This document shows, piece by piece, positions 2,023 to 51,433 of a DNA stretch of 64,000 bases; position 1 is the stretch's first letter; each line of letters starts with the position of its first letter. The DNA lies in the NCBI GenBank assembly GCA_003693705.1, contig RBZT01000978.1, forward strand, positions 4,659 through 68,658, written 5' to 3'. The notes under the pieces are model-generated. The model saw only the letters and a program-made list of their open reading frames with translations, had not been told where the DNA came from and searched no databases. This DNA comes from Polymyxa betae A26-41. Its lineage: Eukaryota; Protista; Endomyxa: Phytomyxea. The translations under genes and the position numbers were made by a program.

Positions 2023-4703
2023 ATGGCATGCTGGTCCCGGTCGTGCACGCCCTCGCCTAGTTGTTATACTGTCTATATACGTGATAGATTGAGTCGATAT
2101 TCAGAACATAGATGGTGGTTGATATCAATGACATTAATAACATTAATATCACTCTATATAGATGATATTCAACAATATTACTTTACTAAATCATCAGATA
2201 CAATATTCCAGGTAATATCAACATATATATTTATTATATATCTAGTCGAATTAATTCTATTATGTCTTGTACAAGCACATTATCCATTATCATTATTCTT
2301 CTTTCTAGATTTAATATCAACATTAGCTATATTTCCACATACTTCATTCATGCCACAAGCATTATTAGGTGATGCATTCCGTTCTAATAGTTCAACAACT
2401 ACAAATTTCAATCTAATGCGTGCTGCACGTGCAACTCGTGCTGGTACTCGTGCTTCACGTATATTACGTATTAGTCGTATTATTCGTATATTACGTTTAG
2501 CGAAATTATCCAAGATTGTTGTACAACGCTTACATAAGAAATCGTCACCTACATTTAATACGAAATCAAGATATCCTCATCATAATACTGATATTGTACA
2601 TTCTATCGCAACTCCATCACATACGTCGAGCAGTCATACTGGCCCGCCACTGCATCCTCAATATGGTGGAGATCAATCACGTGTTGGTGCCCGTTTAGCA
2701 GATCTAACAGCACAACGTTTAGCTGTAATGGTATTATCAATGTTATTTATAATTCCATTAATATCATATCATGATGATATACAAGCACCATTAGTTGCTT
2801 TAGATCAGATTATACAATTAAGTAGAAATCAATCAGTATCATTACAACATGCTGCACTTCAATTTACTGAATTTCAAGATCGACATGGAGTTCAATCGTG
2901 GACTGTATTAGCTTTAAGATTACAGAGTCCAGATGCACAACAATATTATTATGAATCTGAAGATCTTCAACTATACAGATCTAATGAGATATCTGTATAT
3001 CAATATGATGATCAGAATGAAGTAGTATTTTCTATACAAGCTTTCATGCAGAATCGATCTCTATATTCTATATATCAAACAACATTTATTATCATGTTAA
3101 TGGGTATTGCAGCATTGGTATTTCTTCATGATGCTGAGCATCTAATCATACGTCCTATTGAACGTATGACAAGGGTTATAGATCGATTACGTAGTAATCC
3201 ATTGGCTAAGAATCAACATAGATCTGGTACTGAATCAGAACCTGAGACATTAGAGACTGCTATGCTGTAAGAATATCTCTTTAAATCATATTCAGACATC
3301 TAATCATGATTATAGAGAACATACATTGGAGAAATTAACTGGATTATTACAGATTGGATTTGGAGAAGCTGGATCAGCGATGATACAGAAGAATATTAAT
3401 GCAAATGGCGAATTAAATGCATTAGTCAATGGTGAACGTGTTCTGGCTATATTCGGGTTCTGTCATATTCGTGGATTTCAAGATATGAATGGACAACTTC
3501 ATGAGAATATCATGCTGTTTGTTAATGAAATAGCCGAGATTGTACATCGACAGGTTCATGAATCTGGTGGTGCTGTTAATCGTAATCTTGGAGAGACTTT
3601 TGTCCTGGTCTGGAAGATCCCTCAGGTTCTCTTATATAATCAATATGATGCATGAATGTAATATTGATATAACAGATAGTACGAGCTGATAGAATGGAAT
3701 GGATATTAGAACATGATCCTCAAGGAATACATCCAGATACACAATTATCTTCAATTGAACATCAAGCATTACAAGATGCACAACAGACTGCTGCTCATGC
3801 ATTAGCTGCATTTATTCGTGTTATCTATCATTGCTCTAATCCATCTCCACAATTACAGCAATTACTTAATACTTCCAACAACGTAACCACCTCCTTTCTG
3901 TTCTCTCAATCAAATTCTGTTCAATGTATTACTTATGTTGGTTATTTCAATGTGATATTGAATATTAAGGTGGATTTATGTATTCAGCAATCAACAACAG
4001 AAGGTGTGTCGGTTGGTCTTGGATTACATGTTGGATGGGCTATTGAAGGTGCTATTGGATCTCGATTCAAGATAGATGCATCATATCTATCACCAAATGT
4101 GAATATGGCAGCCCGATTAATGGCTGCGACAAAGCAATATCGTGTACCATTACTATTTAGTAAGGAATTCTGGTATATAAACATGTCTCATATTTACATG
4201 TTCATATCTGACATTTATATAGGTCGATATTACCATTATCAGCTCGAAATCGATGTCGTCAATTAGATCGTGTAGCAGTGAAAGGCAGTAATAAACCAAT
4301 AGGTTTGTATACATTCGATTTGAATACGTCATTACCATCACGATCATCACGATCATCATCAAAATCATCAATGGCTCTCATCTCTATGACCAAATCTGCC
4401 ATTGAACGACGACGACGTGAACATCGTAATAAGGCCAAGACCAGGCCTGTAGACTTTGACAATGATAAATTGCTGAACTCGTTGCAGAATGGGGTCATTG
4501 TGAAAGCCTTCCGTGAGAATCATGAAGAAGGTCTAGCTGCATATCTGCAAGGTGATTGGGCTAAGGCTATCAAGCTATTCGAGATGGCGTTGCGATTTAA
4601 ACCATCAGATGGTCCAACTGATAATCTGATCAAGTATATTCGAGATTCGGGTGGTCATGCTCCTGAATATTGGTCAGGATATCGACCTCTATCTCAAAAA
4701 TAA
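2023..4703 (+). CDS. Ion-channel (voltage-sensor)/class III adenylyl cyclase fusion with C-terminal TPR-like helix pair; catalytic Asp residues degenerate
   Basis: S1-S3 helices, S4 RAARATRAGTRASRILRISRIIRILRLAK, linker LIIRPIERM...ETLET...GLLQIGFGEAG, cyclase motifs GLHVGWAIEGAIGSRFKIDASYLSPNVNMAARL and DRVAVKGSNKPIGLYTFD, C-terminal YLQGDW...DGP...WSGYR. This is the Paramecium/Plasmodium AC architecture. GT-AG introns near 3267, 3626 and 4172. Confidence 0.92.
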
Positions 4704-42382: not shown

Positions 42383-43776
42383 TCACACCTGTGATGAAAG
42401 CTTGCCAGCACGATTCCTGTGCGGTATTCGACGTTCCATCCAGTAAACAGGGAACGCGAACATCACAATGACAAGAACTAGCTGGGATATGTTCCAAGCG
42501 GTAACACTGAGATGAAATAATGACTGAAATACCAGCCCATGTGCTAAGAATATGATTGAATTGATAAGAAACAGAACACCGATCAGCATTCCGAAGTTCT
42601 GATAGCCAAAATCGACACTCATTACGAAGAAAATCCAGGAGAAGAAGCAACTTCGACTAACAGGGTACAGCAACAGTGCAGTTAGCAATAACCCGATGCT
42701 ATTGACGCAGAGAAGAAGTGCAATAGAATATCCTAATAAAAGAGACATTACCAGGACTGCAGACTTCACAATCCCGAAACGATCAATGACAGCGCCAAAG
42801 AGAGGGTTTATAATCCTAAACATATTTAGAAAAGCAAGTAAGAAAAAAAAACAGCTGGAATCATACACGCCAGTTAATAGAAGCAGTTGGCTTAAATCGG
42901 TGTAGGACTGCACAGTTTCGATACTGGCAGCCACCCCAAGTGCATTGCTAATTTGTTCTTTAGTTAGGACCAGGAAACTGTTCAGATAAAACAAAATGAC
43001 GGGTAGAAACAGGGCCATGCCGAAATAGCTCGAAGTGAACATCTGAGATCCTAGCGATTTTCGGCTCTCGAGCGCTCTCGCTCCACTTGTAATACAGAAC
43101 TTGAATATGGAAGGTTGAACCTTGTCATCAATTGAGACAGATTTGGTTCCGAACGCTTGCATAGGCCAAACCACAAAGGAGGCAATCGCAAGAGCCAGCT
43201 GTAAGCTAGCCAGTATGATTAGCAGAATCTGGAACGAGAAACCCAAACCATAAAGATTTTTGATGAGGAGAAATAGAAGACAGGAGACCTGAAATGCCCC
43301 GATTTGCAATGAGACGACTAATCCTCGATTGTTTGGAAACAGCGCTGCCAGATGGATTGTTGAAACCTGAGTTCCAGGGCCACATAATCCAATCAGAGTA
43401 CAGGCAACATACAGAGCCTGAAAATATTGCAATCCAAACGATAGGATGAATGTTCCAAAACCCAGTAATGACATGCAAATCCCAGAGCATCGTTTAGGGC
43501 CAACTGCATCTAGTAAAAGACCACATAGAAACTGTCCTAGGGCTACAGCCATGATACCTGTCTGCCCTAATATCATAAAATTGATTTCCTTATGCATATT
43601 CTCCTCTTCTAAGATGATTCTGAGAGAGGCAAAGCCATACATCTGGCATTATTAAGAAACCAGTGATTGAAGATTAGACTTCGACAGACCATTCCGCTGG
43701 ACATAGCAATCTGAAGTAGAGATAACAATACAAGCGGCCATCGTAACTTTTCGTAATTAATATTCAATAAAGACAT
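42383..43776 (-). CDS. MFS transporter (SLC43/FMP42-like)
   Basis: About 12 TM segments, motif A GLLLDAVGPK and GAVIDRFGI, HLAALFP, DFGYQNFGMLIG; the first exon MSLLNINYEKLRWPLVLL splices to MYGF. Confidence 0.85.
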
Positions 43777-44384
43777 ATCGGCTTGAGAAAAAGAAAAGTG
43801 AAAAGTGAAAGAAAGCAGATCAGGGTCGCGTCATATACAAAGGACACATGAGAATTGACCTGCGCAGTAGTATAGTTAGTCAATTAATCAATTGATCTCA
43901 TCCTTTATTAGTTATTGAGTCTTCGCCATACAGAATCGTAGCCGAACTGGCATTTAAATAAGTGGTGACGTTGATGTGATGATACTGTCCCAGTAGAGCT
44001 CGCTTTTCGCTGGTGTGCCAATTGCAATGTCAGAAGGACCTATTGTTTGCGGTGATGATACTTTTGCATGTTCTAATAATATGTTGCTAGTCACGCTTGT
44101 TGAGAGGATGTCATGCAAGTTCGTTGTATGTACAAGATCCCTCCGACCTAGCTATTCTTGTCTATGTAAGACACACCTGTGATACAGATTAGTATCACGT
44201 AGCTGTCTTGTGGTAGTTCAGATTGACGTCTGATCAGAGGACGTCGCCACCTCAATGGTGTCGGATTTCGTGCGAGCCGAGAGAGAATGAGGTCGCGTCC
44301 TGTGACCAGAACGATAGATCTCCATTACGATATTGCGATAGCAAATCAGATGAATCGGTTGTTGCGTCCTGCATTTTTCAGACC

Positions 44385-46481
44385 ATGACCACACGTGATC
44401 CCAACAATCTCGAATCACCATTGCTAACTGCTCACAATGATAACAGGAAGTTCACTGTAGCGGCACTATGGCTGAAAGATGCCATGGGTTTTCGATCAGT
44501 GAATTTGAAAACATTGGATCCACCATCGCTGATTTACCTTAACATCGATAGGAATTCGGCACTACAATTTCTATACTCACGACCTTTTCAAATTGTTCTT
44601 TTGATGGCTGTTTGCTTACATTTGATTGTACCTGTGGTTCCTGCTATCATGTTTCCATTCAAGCTGTTATGTATTATTCTTGTCTATGCAACACGTGAAG
44701 CGCTTCTGCTTTATGTTCGCCCTTTTCGGCTGCGAGTCGTTGCGAGAATATTGGCAATATTGACCATGCTCTACCTAACTATCCAGTCGGAAATTTCCAC
44801 CATCTCACCTCATGACGCTGCCATGGTATGTGGCGTATTTGCTCCTCTATTTTTAATCGATGTGTTTCCTTCATTACGGTTTATGGCAACCGCTATGATT
44901 ACAGCCAGTATTAGTGTCTTTCCTATTGTCATTTCTATCGCCTGTCTCGTGATTCTCTTCGGCTGTGTTGGGCATCTGTTCTTTTCAGGACATTTTTTCG
45001 GTCTCGCAGCAAATAACAACTTTCGAGACATGACCACATCGATATTCTCAATGTTGTATTTAATGACAACTGTTAACTTCCCGGATATTATGATGCCAAA
45101 TTATCATCAGAAGGGTGTCGTATTCGTATTTTTTGGCCTTTATTTGGTGCTAACACTGCTCATGTTCGCATGGTTGTTAGCTTCCGTGTATGGTTCGTAC
45201 ATAGATATTCGGCTGAAACAGCTAACGGGCATGGTTTTAAATCAGAAAGCATCTTTGGTGCGCGTATTCGATCGTATTGCTACCAATGCTGAGACATTAA
45301 GCCGGGAAGATTTCGAATGCCTGATGTCATACTATCGTCCAGATCTAAAAGAACATTATGCTCAGGCTTTGTATACGTTAATGGATCATGATGAAGTTGG
45401 ATATATATCGAAACGATGCTGGCTTGATCACGCCAATAGATGTCTTGATATTACAATTCAACAGCAGAAACATTCTGATACTAAATTCCGCCATCCGATT
45501 CACATTCTGGCTACAAGTGTTCCAGTTCTGTTAATTCGTGCATTCGTGATCGCAATTGATGCCTGGCTACTCTTTGAACGTGCTCTGATTCCTGTATCAG
45601 AAGCACATCTGAAATCCGTTCAACTTTCCATTCGTCTTTTACAGGGAGTCTTCTTGTTCGAGGCTATCGCGAAAATAATTTTACTTCGCGGTTTGATTCT
45701 GCAGAACAAGTTCCAGAAAATCGACATTGCTGTTATATTGGTATCATCTGTGGGAATACTTGATTTCAAATATCACGAATATTTTCAGTTAGTCGCCATC
45801 GGGCGGGTGTTCAGCCTGATACCACTTTTCGAAAAAACGCATTCACTGAAAAGAATATCACTTCTTCTGTCAGGCATGTTGGCCATGACTCTTTCAGTTT
45901 TTTATGTGTTTGCTTATGTCGGGGCGTTATTGTTTGCTGATAAGGTCACTGATACTCCCGAACTGAGAGCCAAAATAATGGCTGCTGATAAAGATGTTGC
46001 CAACATTTGGATTGGAGCACATTATTTCGACTTGAACTTCAACACGTTTGCCGACGGACTCGTCATGTTGTTCGTTCTGGCTATTGTCAATAACTGGCAT
46101 GTTATCACAAACGGGTATCTGATTCCGTTTCAATTTAATCGCAGCTGAATTTCTTTCTCTAGCTACATAATATTAACTGATTCCATCAACACCAGTATCT
46201 TCTTCATCAGCTTCTATTTCGTAGCGGTCGTGCTTGTATTGAACATTGCCACAGGTCTCATTCTGGAAGAATTCATGCTGAATCGAATTCCTCGTTCCCA
46301 GTGGCAAAGCCGTCTTCTGCAAATATTAACGAAACAATTTGCAGACGTCCCAGTGACCGATTGGGTGGTCAGAAAACCAGTACATCTCCAGCTCATGCTC
46401 ATGGATCATATCGATTCCGAATTGTCCACTCTAAGTCATTTCAAAACTCTGTTTCGGACAACACATTTAATGCCTGTTTAA
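44385..46481 (+). CDS. Two-pore channel (TPC)
   Basis: Two 6TM repeats; pore I LMTTVNFPDIMMPNY, pore II YFDLNFNTFADGLVMLFVLAIVNNWHVI; EF-hand-like linker; LVLNIATGLILEEF. One intron near 46114-46161. Confidence 0.9.
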
Positions 46482-49422: not shown

Positions 49423-51093
49423 TTATGGAGCTGGTTTTGAGTGAGGTCGTGATTTGGTCTTGGTCGATGTCAAGAACGGAGCATGAAACTCGTCGCTATC
49501 AGAATCTTCATCAGTATTAGGTTCCCCATCGCTCCAGGCTGACGTTGGTGGTATTAGAGCTGGTGTCGCCTCCACCAATAACACATCCTCATCAATGGCG
49601 GTTGCATCAAAATCATTCCTGACATGAACATCGTTGATGAATGTATTCTGTTGTATCATCCATTGTTGCAGAATACGACACACTTGTTCTTCCATGAATG
49701 CAAGATGATGTACTAATGTTGTCTCTGTCACAGGTGTTATTGTCAGTGGATCCTCAACATCTCCAAACAATTTCAATATTTTCCCAATACCAGTCCTTAG
49801 GTTCGCCATGGTTCTGCCTTGATCAGCAGCCTTATCATTCAATTCTGCTAGATCGTGCTGTACTGATGCTAACCTCTCACCAAGCCTTCCAATAGCTGAT
49901 TGACTTACAAGCCGCTCACGTAGTCGCCCGTCGGTAACACTGCCTGCATCGCCATGGATTTTGGCGTCAGATAATGCATCAGCTTGCAGACGAATTTCGT
50001 CGAGTTTATCATCGAGGTCATCAATATCGTCATTTAGAAGATTCACGATCTGAAATTTTTGGAAGTTCCTGTCTTCACTTGTCTCAAAGACGGCAATGAG
50101 ATCATCAAATGTCTCAACACCAATTGCCTGCCGAAGTCGATCAAACTGGTGACGATATGCATCAACTCTAGCTCTTGTCATTCTGATACAAGCTTTATCT
50201 TTAGCAATATCCCATGCTCCTGCTGTTAGCACCGTTCGCAATTCAGATTCTTGTGCTTGAGCCCATTTCTCTTTCTCTTTCACGAGTTTACGATCACTTA
50301 ACAATCCGATGAAGCCAACAATCTTATCGTTGTAAGACACGAGACGACCCAGTTCACGCCATTGGTCTTGGAACTGACGATGTTCTCGATCAGCCGTATA
50401 TTTTAATTCGGCAACCAGAGCTGTTGAAGCATCTCTTGTTGCCGCTAAAGCATTGGTTCGTTCAACAACTTGAGTTATTTGTGTGACATGTTTGTTGGTT
50501 TGACGAAGTATGTGACCAATCATACGTTCCACCATAATACGATCAACACGAAGTTCATGAATAGTTTGACGCATGCTTCGATTTGAGGTTATTCGTCTAT
50601 TGAAATCAATTCGTGCCCGATGTAACCGATGCTCCAAAATCTGGAATTGTTTCAGATCCCGATCTCGTGCTTCCTTGCTAGCATAAATGCCACCCTCCGC
50701 CTTCCTTCTCTCCATAATACCAAAATAGAACTCTTCAGCTAAACGTTCCAATCTATCAAGACGTTCTTGTTTATCTTGTGCGACAGCATTAAACCATTCC
50801 TCTTGAGTATCATCAGTCTCATTTGTTTCAATCTCAGCGCAAGCTTTCTGTTCTGTCAGCCATGCAAGACTTGCTGAGTCGCTTGTCAGCTGCTTCTGCA
50901 TTTTGTTATTGGCTGATTTCATCTTTTCGATTTGTGAATGCATGAGTCGGCTGACAGAAGGTGTGAAATTAATCAATGGGACGCTGCGAGACTCGAGCTG
51001 TCGTGTCTTCTTGACAAGACCTTCGAGTCCATCTGTAACAGCTTTTGTCGTGTCATCTTCATAATTAAGTGTCTTATCTCGGAATAAGCCCAT
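49423..51093 (-). CDS. Outer dynein arm docking complex subunit (ODA1/DC2, CCDC114/CCDC63-like), intronless
   Basis: QFQILEHRLHRARIDFN...NRSMRQTIHELRVDR, ADREHRQFQDQWRELGRL, LIAVFETSEDRNFQKFQIVNLLN. Confidence 0.78.
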   Translation of the reverse strand: MGLFRDKTLNYEDDTTKAVTDGLEGLVKKTRQLESRSVPLINFTPSVSRLMHSQIEKMKSANNKMQKQLTSDSASLAWLTEQKACAEIETNETDDTQEEWFNAVAQDKQERLDRLERLAEEFYFGIMERRKAEGGIYASKEARDRDLKQFQILEHRLHRARIDFNRRITSNRSMRQTIHELRVDRIMVERMIGHILRQTNKHVTQITQVVERTNALAATRDASTALVAELKYTADREHRQFQDQWRELGRLVSYNDKIVGFIGLLSDRKLVKEKEKWAQAQESELRTVLTAGAWDIAKDKACIRMTRARVDAYRHQFDRLRQAIGVETFDDLIAVFETSEDRNFQKFQIVNLLNDDIDDLDDKLDEIRLQADALSDAKIHGDAGSVTDGRLRERLVSQSAIGRLGERLASVQHDLAELNDKAADQGRTMANLRTGIGKILKLFGDVEDPLTITPVTETTLVHHLAFMEEQVCRILQQWMIQQNTFINDVHVRNDFDATAIDEDVLLVEATPALIPPTSAWSDGEPNTDEDSDSDEFHAPFLTSTKTKSRPHSKPAP

Positions 51094-51433
51094 GGTTGCG
51101 ATTAGCAAGCTTTGGACCCTGTCAATATGGCGAAATTACAAGGTACTGTACTCAATACGATCGATTCTGGCTCTACCCTCTTGATAAATTATGCAACATT
51201 TATGGACTTCGCTGATGATGTTAATCGAGCCAAAAGTTGAAGTGTTTTCTCATCAACAGCTGTTAAAATTTGGTACTGTTGGCAAATCAGGGGAAGAGTC
51301 AGTCGTATCCGTTCTTCCAACGAGCGCTACCAGCATGGCTAGCCTGAAACCGGAGCCGAATAATGTGAGATTAGAATTCTACAGAATATTGAATGTTGAT
51401 TTCAATCTGGCTTGTTTGAAAATCTGCAATATA

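What the first reader, a model, noticed from the sequence alone, without database searches (positions are those of the whole stretch)
3326..4703. Voltage-sensor/adenylyl cyclase fusion lacking both metal-binding aspartates: pseudo-cyclase or obligate heterodimer half
Seen: FGFCHIRGF (CAT at 3464-3466), NRNLGETFVLVWK (GAG at 3593-3595) and intact KIDASYLSPNVNMAARL. Established: in this family the motifs read FGFCDIRxF and NKNIGDAFLLVWK. Those two Asp bind the catalytic metals, while Lys/Asp (adenine specificity) and Asn/Arg (transition state) come from the partner subunit of the class III dimer. Here both metal ligands are changed (D>H, D>E) and the specificity Lys is Arg, yet the D/N/R residues and a highly charged S4 are kept. 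Inference: a 'C2-like' subunit, inactive as a homodimer, that could pair with a paralog as a voltage-regulated heteromeric cyclase or act as a regulator.
Basis: partly seen in the sequence, partly recalled or inferred. Interest (0 to 1): 0.8.

Follow-up and report, generated by a model that had tools for sequence, protein, structure and literature searches.

The report
Half-site voltage-sensor cyclase with matching partner
This gene of the sugar-beet root parasite Polymyxa betae encodes a voltage-sensor-linked cyclase that lacks the metal-binding half of its active site. The genome's only other gene of this type lacks the opposite half, so the two most likely work only as a pair.

Summary
CAT at 3464-3466 (His) and GAG at 3593-3595 (Glu) replace the two metal-binding Asp of a class III cyclase. 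The transition-state Asn and Arg and the phosphate Lys are kept.

The gene is larger than reported: five exons, 2023-4703, 808 aa. It has an S1-S4 voltage sensor, two more membrane helices around a small ectodomain, a long linker helix, the cyclase and a TPR tail. It belongs to the Paramecium/Tetrahymena/Plasmodium "ion-channel adenylyl cyclase" family.

The assembly matches the published Polymyxa betae draft. It holds exactly one other family member, on contig C725. That paralog is intact and keeps both Asp and the Lys, but has lost the Asn (Glu), the Arg (Thr) and the phosphate Lys (Arg).

Across 302 relatives, secondary residues decay on the side this model predicts. Complementary pairs also occur within Rhodelphis marinus and within Platysulcus tardus.

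Best reading, 0.65: an obligate heterodimer with one composite catalytic site.

Caveats:
- The Plasmodiophora brassicae ortholog still has both Asp.
- The partner has no detectable ortholog.
- Nothing was tested biochemically.

The scan had noted this same stretch before (s1-673949), read from another window.

The parts
2023..3266 (+). Exon 1 (residues 1-414 plus 2 bases): membrane module and start of the linker helix
   Evidence: Open frame from ATG 2023 with an in-frame stop just upstream. GTAAGA donor at 3267. The P. brassicae ortholog P0155 aligns from residue 20.
2059..2547 (+). S1-S4 voltage-sensor domain (residues 13-175)
   Evidence: AlphaFold2 model, pLDDT 81, pTM 0.77. Every listed structural match (top 50) is the voltage sensor of another protein. 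Best is the Ci-VSP sensor 4g7v, Z 11.9, rmsd 3.1 A, 129 of 136 residues. Pfam Ion_trans is sub-threshold at 17.2 bits. Acidic D59, E76 and D96 are invariant or nearly so in 88 homologs.
2416..2505 (+). S4 helix with nine Arg and one Lys, mostly at every third position (residues 132-161)
   Evidence: Sequence. R146, R149, R152 and R155 are nearly invariant in the family.
2680..3195 (+). TM5 (220-247), folded ectodomain of two helices and four strands (255-337), and TM6 running into a long cytosolic helix (339-391). No pore-loop match.
   Evidence: AlphaFold2 secondary structure. Structural matches cover only residues 13-171.
3316..3625 (+). Exon 2: GFG linker motif (3353-3373) and the first half of the cyclase domain
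   Evidence: It matches canonical relative P0017 at 53% identity.
3464..3466 (+). CAT = His465 at metal-binding position 1 (Asp in the family)
   Evidence: The position was mapped on bPAC and CyaB.
3479..3481 (+). CAA = Gln470 in place of the Thr of the FT(D) phosphate loop
3581..3583 (+). CGT = Arg504 at the purine-selecting Lys position
   Evidence: Arg is shared by orthologs P0155, P0003 and P0154.
3593..3595 (+). GAG = Glu508 at metal-binding position 2 (Asp in the family)
3676..3882 (+). Exon 3: variable insert between the two cyclase halves
   Evidence: This is the least conserved part of the cytosolic region.
3988..4172 (+). Exon 4: second cyclase half, with Ser619 (4081-4083), Asn626 (4102-4104) and Arg630 (4114-4116) all kept. 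An in-frame alternative acceptor would start the exon at 3970.
   Evidence: Pfam PF00211 gives 17.8 bits on this exon alone. 80% identical to P0017.
4223..4703 (+). Exon 5: end of the cyclase with Lys669 of VKG kept (4281-4283), a Ser/Arg-rich spacer, the TPR tail (4497-4700) and stop TAA 4701-4703
   Evidence: TPR_2 E 3.7e-05, 24 bits.

Best explanation
The window gene (called W here) encodes the C2-like half of an obligate heterodimeric, voltage-sensor-coupled class III cyclase. Its partner is the single paralog on contig C725 (called par_P). In the dimer, one composite catalytic site would be built from par_P's two metal Asp and its FT loop, together with W's Arg504, Ser619, Asn626, Arg630 and Lys669. 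The mirror site (W His465/Glu508 with par_P Glu/Thr/Arg) is degenerate and could at most bind a regulator. Each subunit brings an S1-S4 voltage sensor, two further membrane helices and a long helix leading to the cyclase. Membrane potential would therefore be relayed through these helices to the catalytic dimer. By analogy with Paramecium and with the flagellar Phytophthora homolog, this probably happens in the zoospore flagella. Shown here: the residues, the intact gene models, the uniqueness and complementarity of the paralog, the voltage-sensor fold, and the family-wide residue pattern. Inferred: physical pairing, activity, the product (cAMP or cGMP), voltage control, and location.
For: Exact complementarity: across Me1, FT, Lys, Me2, Ser, Asn, Arg and VKG-Lys, W reads H Q R E S N R K and par_P reads D T K D S E T R, against the family norm D T K D S N R K. 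The genome has only these two members, so no canonical, homodimer-competent copy exists. Both genes are intact. W has 5 exons and par_P has 10, all with GT-AG introns. They are collinear over their whole length at 29% identity, E 3e-101. W's cyclase halves and linker are its best-conserved parts against the P. brassicae ortholog: 66-72% identity versus 31-40% in the membrane module. W's branch is no longer than the ortholog's. Family-wide, in 302 members: the VKG Lys is kept in 36/38 C2-like and 176/178 canonical members, but in only 24/64 C1-like members. The FT Thr/Ser is kept in 63/64 C1-like but only 18/38 C2-like members. Complementary pairs occur within single species: Rhodelphis marinus P0034 + P0132, which are sister sequences (support 98), and Platysulcus tardus P0022 + P0006. 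W's clade is sister (support 98-99) to a C1-like clade that includes the rhizarian Mataza.
Against: The P. brassicae ortholog P0155 keeps both Asp, so the half-site state is not conserved across plasmodiophorids. par_P sits on a very long branch (1.0-1.5 changes per site), and no ortholog turned up among the listed hits of the searches run. The only would-be active site carries Arg instead of the purine-selecting Lys. Members degenerate on both sides are not rarer than independence predicts: 20 observed against about 16.5 expected (my calculation). Dead copies therefore do exist in this family.
Confidence: 0.65

Rival explanations
1. Both Polymyxa copies are catalytically dead pseudo-cyclases. 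They would be kept for another role, for example as voltage-sensing scaffolds, regulators or conductances, and the complementarity would be coincidental.
For: Twenty of 302 family members are degenerate on both sides. par_P is fast-evolving with no ortholog found. The purine Lys is Arg in the only possible active site. An earlier scan note reports other catalytically dead cyclase fusions in this genome (s1-657952; not checked here).
Against: The losses split cleanly by side of the active site, at seven changed positions in two proteins; my rough estimate is about 0.002 by chance. The retained catalytic motifs are the most conserved parts of W. Secondary residues decay side-specifically across the family.
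Confidence: 0.17
2. W is active on its own as a homodimer, with His465 and Glu508 acting as unusual metal ligands, perhaps with a different metal preference.
For: His and Glu can both coordinate divalent metals. Glu at metal position 2 recurs in relatives such as P0158, P0183, P0079, P0295 and Perkinsus P0259. All C2-side residues of W are intact.
Against: Position 1 is Thr in the related P0003/P0154 and Ile, Gly, Phe, Asn or Ser in other C2-like members, which are not metal ligands. The FT loop is also lost. This reading does not explain why the only paralog lacks the opposite residues.
Confidence: 0.1
3. The substitutions are assembly errors, or the gene is a decaying pseudogene.
For: The codons could not be checked against reads. 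The assembly is a draft binned from a metagenome (PMC6328671).
Against: The frame is intact with canonical splice sites. There are four separate codon changes, none in a homopolymer. Reported coverage is 225x. The cyclase region is 66-72% identical to the ortholog, and related sequences also vary at metal position 1.
Confidence: 0.04

Closest known systems
Ion-channel / adenylyl cyclase fusion proteins of Paramecium, Tetrahymena and Plasmodium (ACalpha; Weber et al. 2004, cited in PMC3283738 and PMC12223298)
   Same: Same architecture: S1-S4 sensor with Arg-rich S4, two more membrane helices, GXG motif after TM6, class III cyclase and TPR tail. The closest W relative, P0003, matches the Tetrahymena pyriformis adenylyl cyclase (P0225) and Paramecium proteins at 37-39% identity over the cytosolic half.
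   Different: The alveolate enzymes carry all canonical catalytic residues (PMC5746546). W lacks both metal Asp, the FT Thr and the purine Lys. [quoted passage not shown]
Mammalian membrane adenylyl cyclases (6TM-C1-6TM-C2 pseudo-heterodimers)
   Same: One composite active site: metal Asp from C1 and purine, Asn, Arg and Lys residues from C2, plus a degenerate second site (established knowledge; PMC9552081, PMC8815786). Two 6TM-plus-cyclase halves would give the same 12-TM, two-domain layout.
   Different: Here the halves are separate genes on different contigs. The membrane modules are voltage sensors. The cyclase is class IIIb-like, closest to bPAC, CyaB and CyaC.
Soluble guanylyl cyclase alpha/beta
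   Same: Two separately encoded class III subunits that form one catalytic site (established knowledge).
   Different: Soluble, haem/NO-regulated, with no membrane or voltage-sensor module.
Heterodimeric rhodopsin-guanylyl cyclases of chytrid zoospores (RGC1/2 + NeoR)
   Same: Sensor-fused class III cyclases of a zoospore-forming protist that work only as heterodimers of separately encoded chains (PMC8815786).
   Different: RGC1/2 keep all catalytic residues, and the need to pair is attributed to the rhodopsin or linker parts. Here it follows from complementary catalytic losses.
Phytophthora parasitica PPTG_13136 / PPTG_13761
   Same: Two voltage-sensor-cyclase paralogs (38.75% identical) in a plant-parasitic zoospore former. 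PPTG_13136 was immunolocalised mainly on a single flagellum, and the paper groups both as mostly flagellar. No pore-helix homology (PMC12223298).
   Different: The main text contains no word beginning with 'dimer' or 'heterodimer' and does not discuss cyclase catalytic residues. I could not read their sequences. An oomycete member (Aphanomyces P0099, I-K-A-S-N-R) is C2-like and sister to a D-K-D-T-E-R clade of unknown origin.

Membership tests
Ion-channel/voltage-sensor adenylyl cyclase fusion family (Paramecium/Plasmodium ACalpha type) | N-terminal S1-S4 voltage-sensor domain with Arg-rich S4 | tested here: met
   AlphaFold2 model plus VIA-align: Z 11.9 to the Ci-VSP sensor, and all 50 top hits are voltage sensors. 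Nine Arg and one Lys in S4. Pfam Ion_trans is only sub-threshold.
Ion-channel/voltage-sensor adenylyl cyclase fusion family (Paramecium/Plasmodium ACalpha type) | Two further membrane helices, then a GXG motif after TM6 | tested here: met
   TM5 at 220-247 and TM6 at 339 onward in the model. IGFGEAG at residues 428-434.
Ion-channel/voltage-sensor adenylyl cyclase fusion family (Paramecium/Plasmodium ACalpha type) | C-terminal class III cyclase domain homologous to the family's | tested here: met
   Profile search finds more than 4,000 relatives. Ortholog P0155 passes the Pfam PF00211 cut-off. W's single exons are sub-threshold alone. The joined protein was not scanned.
Ion-channel/voltage-sensor adenylyl cyclase fusion family (Paramecium/Plasmodium ACalpha type) | TPR-like tail ending in the W-x-G-Y/F-R motif | tested here: met
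   TPR_2 E 3.7e-05, below the curated cut-off. The tail aligns with par_P and relatives up to YWSGYR.
Ion-channel/voltage-sensor adenylyl cyclase fusion family (Paramecium/Plasmodium ACalpha type) | Complete set of canonical catalytic residues, as reported for PfACalpha | tested here: not met
   H Q R E at Me1, FT, Lys and Me2.
Ion-channel/voltage-sensor adenylyl cyclase fusion family (Paramecium/Plasmodium ACalpha type) | Intrinsic K+ conductance | not testable with these tools
   No pore-domain structural match to residues 220-391. This does not exclude a conductance.
Class IIIb cyclases (Thr/Ser instead of Asp at the second purine position) | Ser/Thr seven residues before the transition-state Asn; closest solved relatives are class IIIb | tested here: met
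   A canonical family member aligned to bPAC, CyaB and CyaC. Ser619 falls in that column.
Obligate heterodimeric class III cyclase with one composite site (tmAC C1/C2, sGC type) | One subunit lacks the metal ligands but keeps purine, Asn, Arg and Lys residues | tested here: met
   W reads H..E with S, N, R and K kept. The purine Lys is Arg.
Obligate heterodimeric class III cyclase with one composite site (tmAC C1/C2, sGC type) | A partner in the same genome keeps the metal ligands but lacks Asn/Arg | tested here: met
   par_P on C725 reads D, T, K, D kept; Asn>Glu, Arg>Thr, Lys>Arg. It is the only other member.
Obligate heterodimeric class III cyclase with one composite site (tmAC C1/C2, sGC type) | Co-expression and physical association of the two chains | not testable with these tools
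No multimer prediction is on hand.
Obligate heterodimeric class III cyclase with one composite site (tmAC C1/C2, sGC type) | Activity only when both chains are present | not testable with these tools
   Needs a biochemical assay.
Pseudogene | Frame disruptions, lost splice sites or relaxed conservation | tested here: not met
   Intact frame and GT-AG introns. The cyclase is the best-conserved region against the ortholog.

The most novel reading that the evidence does not exclude
Voltage-sensor cyclases across eukaryotes (Rhizaria, stramenopiles including plant-parasitic oomycetes, Rhodelphis, some ciliates) often work as obligate heterodimers of complementary half-site subunits. These would have arisen repeatedly by duplication followed by complementary loss. 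The result would be an unfused counterpart of the mammalian 12-TM adenylyl cyclase, with one catalytic site and one spare regulatory site under voltage control.
Probability: 0.45. Interest if true: 0.75.

Novelty: new variant of a known kind. Interest (0 to 1): 0.66.

Why it matters
The ion-channel/voltage-sensor cyclases were described as homodimer-type enzymes with complete active sites. How they are regulated is still unsettled 30 years after the Paramecium work.

A clean two-gene case, one metal-less and one lacking Asn/Arg, gives a direct experiment: assay each catalytic region alone and the two mixed. About a third of the family falls into these two half-site classes, which would explain why many protists carry paired paralogs, possibly including the two flagellar proteins of Phytophthora zoospores.

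It also extends the family to Rhizaria. If the pair controls zoospore swimming, it bears on how a virus-vectoring root parasite finds its host.

I found no description of complementary heterodimers in this family in the searchable literature. The original 2004 paper is not held in that library.

Tried and rejected
Expression, splicing and the two codons remain unconfirmed by reads.

2. P. brassicae ortholog of par_P. A word search with a profile of P0017 plus five par_P exons (A5) was dominated by generic ciliate relatives. No sequence closer than 34% to par_P turned up. Absence is not shown.

3. Placing par_P in the C1-like clade that is sister to W's clade. The AU test does not reject this (p 0.09) but the free tree does not favour it. 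A count of shared rare residues gave no signal. The origin of par_P is left open.

4. Alignments of par_P exon fragments against full-length proteins (A1, A2, A4) were partly misaligned and were discarded. A3 and A5 were used.

5. The Pfam label PF26726 (Helical_RasGEFs), precomputed for relatives, was not reproduced by my own scans and is ignored.

6. A depletion of doubly degenerate members, which would have supported pairing, is not seen: 20 observed against about 16.5 expected.

7. Spliced proteins. The joined models were built only inside local scripts from the stored files, for pairwise and multiple alignments and trees.
Full report
WHAT IS THERE. The window is eukaryotic DNA (40% G+C, short GT-AG introns). 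The assembly G000 has 1,001 contigs and 27,085,814 bases. The published Polymyxa betae draft has 1,001 contigs and 27,085,946 bp at 225x coverage (PMC6328671). Earlier scan notes also name Polymyxa betae. P. betae is a plasmodiophorid (Rhizaria), a root parasite of sugar beet and the vector of rhizomania virus.

The finding's span 3326-4703 is the 3' part of a five-exon gene: 2023-3266, 3316-3625, 3676-3882, 3988-4172 and 4223-4703. The introns are 49, 50, 105 and 50 nt, all GT-AG, and the product is 808 residues. An in-frame alternative acceptor would start exon 4 at 3970; it does not touch any motif.

OBSERVATION. The codons are as reported: CAT 3464-3466 in FGFCHIRGF, GAG 3593-3595 in NRNLGETF, and an intact KIDASYLSPNVNMAARL.

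FAMILY. A profile of exon 1 found 4,168 representatives at E <= 0.001. A word search with the closest relative listed named members:
- Tetrahymena pyriformis adenylyl cyclase (P0225)
- Paramecium
- Perkinsus
- Amoebophrya
- Hondaea
- Pyramimonas
- Plasmodiophora brassicae (P0155)

This is the "ion-channel/adenylyl cyclase" fusion family of Weber et al. 2004, as cited in PMC3283738 and PMC12223298.

In 183 aligned members the six key positions read D-K-D-S-N-R in 96. An environmental relative (L018) shows FGFCDIRQF, NKNIGDAFLLVW and NVNISARL.

I aligned a canonical member to solved structures: bPAC 5m27/5mbh, CyaB 3r5g and CyaC 1wc0. This fixes the identities. The Asp of FCD and of IGD are the metal ligands. 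The Lys four residues before the second Asp is the purine Lys. The residue seven before the Asn is Thr in bPAC and Ser here, which is the class IIIb pattern.

MEMBRANE MODULE. Exon 1 was folded with 88 homologs (pLDDT 81, pTM 0.77). Residues 13-175 form an S1-S4 bundle. Every listed structural match (top 50) is a voltage-sensor domain. [quoted passage not shown] S4 carries nine Arg and one Lys. The acidic countercharges D59, E76 and D96 are invariant or nearly so in the family.

A disordered loop follows. Then come TM5, a small folded ectodomain (two helices, four strands) and TM6, which continues as a roughly 50-residue helix. No pore domain was matched. The Phytophthora paper makes the same remark about its homologs.

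THE PARTNER. Own-genome searches with exon 1, exon 2 and a canonical full-length relative hit only two loci: this gene and C725. I modelled the C725 gene (par_P, locus L015) as ten exons with GT-AG introns, 863 residues. It is collinear with W from S1 to the final WxGYR motif: 29% identity, E 3e-101. Some small introns of this model are uncertain without RNA data. The motif-bearing exons are not.

Key residues:

| Position | Family norm | W | par_P |
|---|---|---|---|
| Me1 (metal 1) | D | H | D |
| FT loop | T | Q | T |
| Purine Lys | K | R | K |
| Me2 (metal 2) | D | E | D |
| Purine Ser | S | S | S |
| Transition-state Asn | N | N | E |
| Transition-state Arg | R | R | T |
| VKG phosphate Lys | K | K | R |

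In class III dimers the metal Asp and the FT loop of one chain face the purine, Asn, Arg and Lys residues of the other. This is established from the mammalian C1/C2 structures. W has lost its whole C1 side and kept its C2 side. par_P shows the reverse. A W:par_P dimer would have one complete site and one degenerate site. W:W and par_P:par_P would have none. The chance of such a clean split for four and three changes among eight positions is roughly 0.002 (my estimate, not a tool result).

IS W DECAYING? No.
- Against the P. brassicae ortholog P0155 (47% overall), the linker and the two cyclase halves are 66-72% identical. The membrane module is only 31-40% identical.
- W's terminal branch (0.32-0.37) is close to the ortholog's (0.25-0.34).

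HISTORY. The orthologs read D Q R D S N R K in P. brassicae (P0155) and T.R.D in P0003/P0154, which are unnamed assemblies 40-42% identical to W. The FT>FQ and Lys>Arg changes are therefore old in this lineage. Loss of metal ligands came later and more than once: His and Glu in Polymyxa, Thr in P0003/P0154, none in P. brassicae. This is what relaxed constraint on the C1 side of a dedicated C2-like subunit would produce. It also means the full half-site state is specific to the Polymyxa line.

W's clade is sister (support 98-99) to a clade of six C1-like sequences (D-K-D-S-N-T/S), one of them from the cercozoan Mataza. Whether par_P belongs to that clade is unresolved: AU p 0.09, long branch, no shared signatures.

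FAMILY-WIDE PATTERN (302 members).

| Class | Members | Scored | VKG Lys kept | FT Thr/Ser kept |
|---|---|---|---|---|
| Canonical | 178 | 178 | 176 | 143 |
| C1-like | 66 | 64 | 24 | 63 |
| C2-like | 38 | 38 | 36 | 18 |
| Both sides degenerate | 20 | 17 | 3 | 9 |

("Scored" counts the members with no gap at any of the eight positions.)

The two secondary residues were not used to define the classes, yet they partition as the half-site model predicts.

Complementary pairs occur within single species. Rhodelphis marinus has P0034 (I-K-E-S-N-R) and P0132 (D-K-D-S-D-A), which are sisters with support 98. Platysulcus tardus has P0022 (N-K-D-S-N-R) and P0006 (D-K-D-S-G-T). An oomycete C2-like clade (Aphanomyces P0099) is sister to a D-K-D-T-E-R clade of unknown source. 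This may correspond to the two flagellar voltage-sensor cyclases of Phytophthora parasitica (PMC12223298), but I could not read those sequences.

Against over-reading: members degenerate on both sides are as frequent as independence predicts (about 16.5 expected), so dead copies do exist.

MECHANISM. Inferred: two 6-TM subunits dimerise through the post-TM6 helices and the cyclase domains. S4 movement changes the helix register and hence the geometry of the single composite site. The degenerate site may bind a regulator, as the forskolin site does in mammalian enzymes. Arg at the purine position leaves the product, cAMP or cGMP, open. A zoospore-flagellar role is proposed by analogy only (Paramecium; Phytophthora).

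LIMITS. There are no reads or transcripts, no multimer prediction and no biochemistry. Spliced proteins were searched exon by exon by reference. The joined searches and folds were left out, and joined models were used only inside local scripts.

LITERATURE. Searches found the family described as carrying all canonical residues (PMC5746546) and, in 2025, as restricted to stramenopiles and alveolates (PMC12223298). I found no mention of complementary heterodimers.

VERDICT. This is a new variant of a known kind, and the claim is directly testable.

Noticed in passing
window 2785-3033: Between TM5 and TM6 the model shows a compact folded ectodomain (two helices plus a four-stranded sheet, pLDDT about 90) where a channel would have its pore loop. 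It could be an extracellular sensor. It was not searched on its own.
   Followed up: no
L015:3038-3489 (G000:C725): The 488-nt first intron of the partner gene holds a 225-bp unit in two tandem copies, 90% alike.
   Followed up: partly
window 44223-46148 (+): A 641-aa open frame with a strong Ion_trans match (E 1e-19). This is a separate cation-channel gene about 40 kb from the cyclase.
   Followed up: no
window 49423-51108 (-): Open frame matching the ODAD1 outer-dynein-arm docking coiled coil (E 2.9e-30), so flagellar motility genes lie in the same window.
   Followed up: no
window 42383-43642 (-): Open frame of the major facilitator superfamily (MFS_1, E 5e-12).
   Followed up: no
relatives P0304/P0310 and P0320/P0336 (Stentor coeruleus): Stentor has copies with Arg>Ala at the transition-state position. 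It also has copies with the same FT-lost plus Lys>Arg signature as the plasmodiophorid W orthologs but with both Asp kept. This may be an earlier stage of the same split.
   Followed up: partly
L018 (JGI metagenome contig, 4,030 bp): An environmental, intron-bearing, fully canonical relative (52% G+C) whose membrane exon was the only hit of the first word search.
   Followed up: partly
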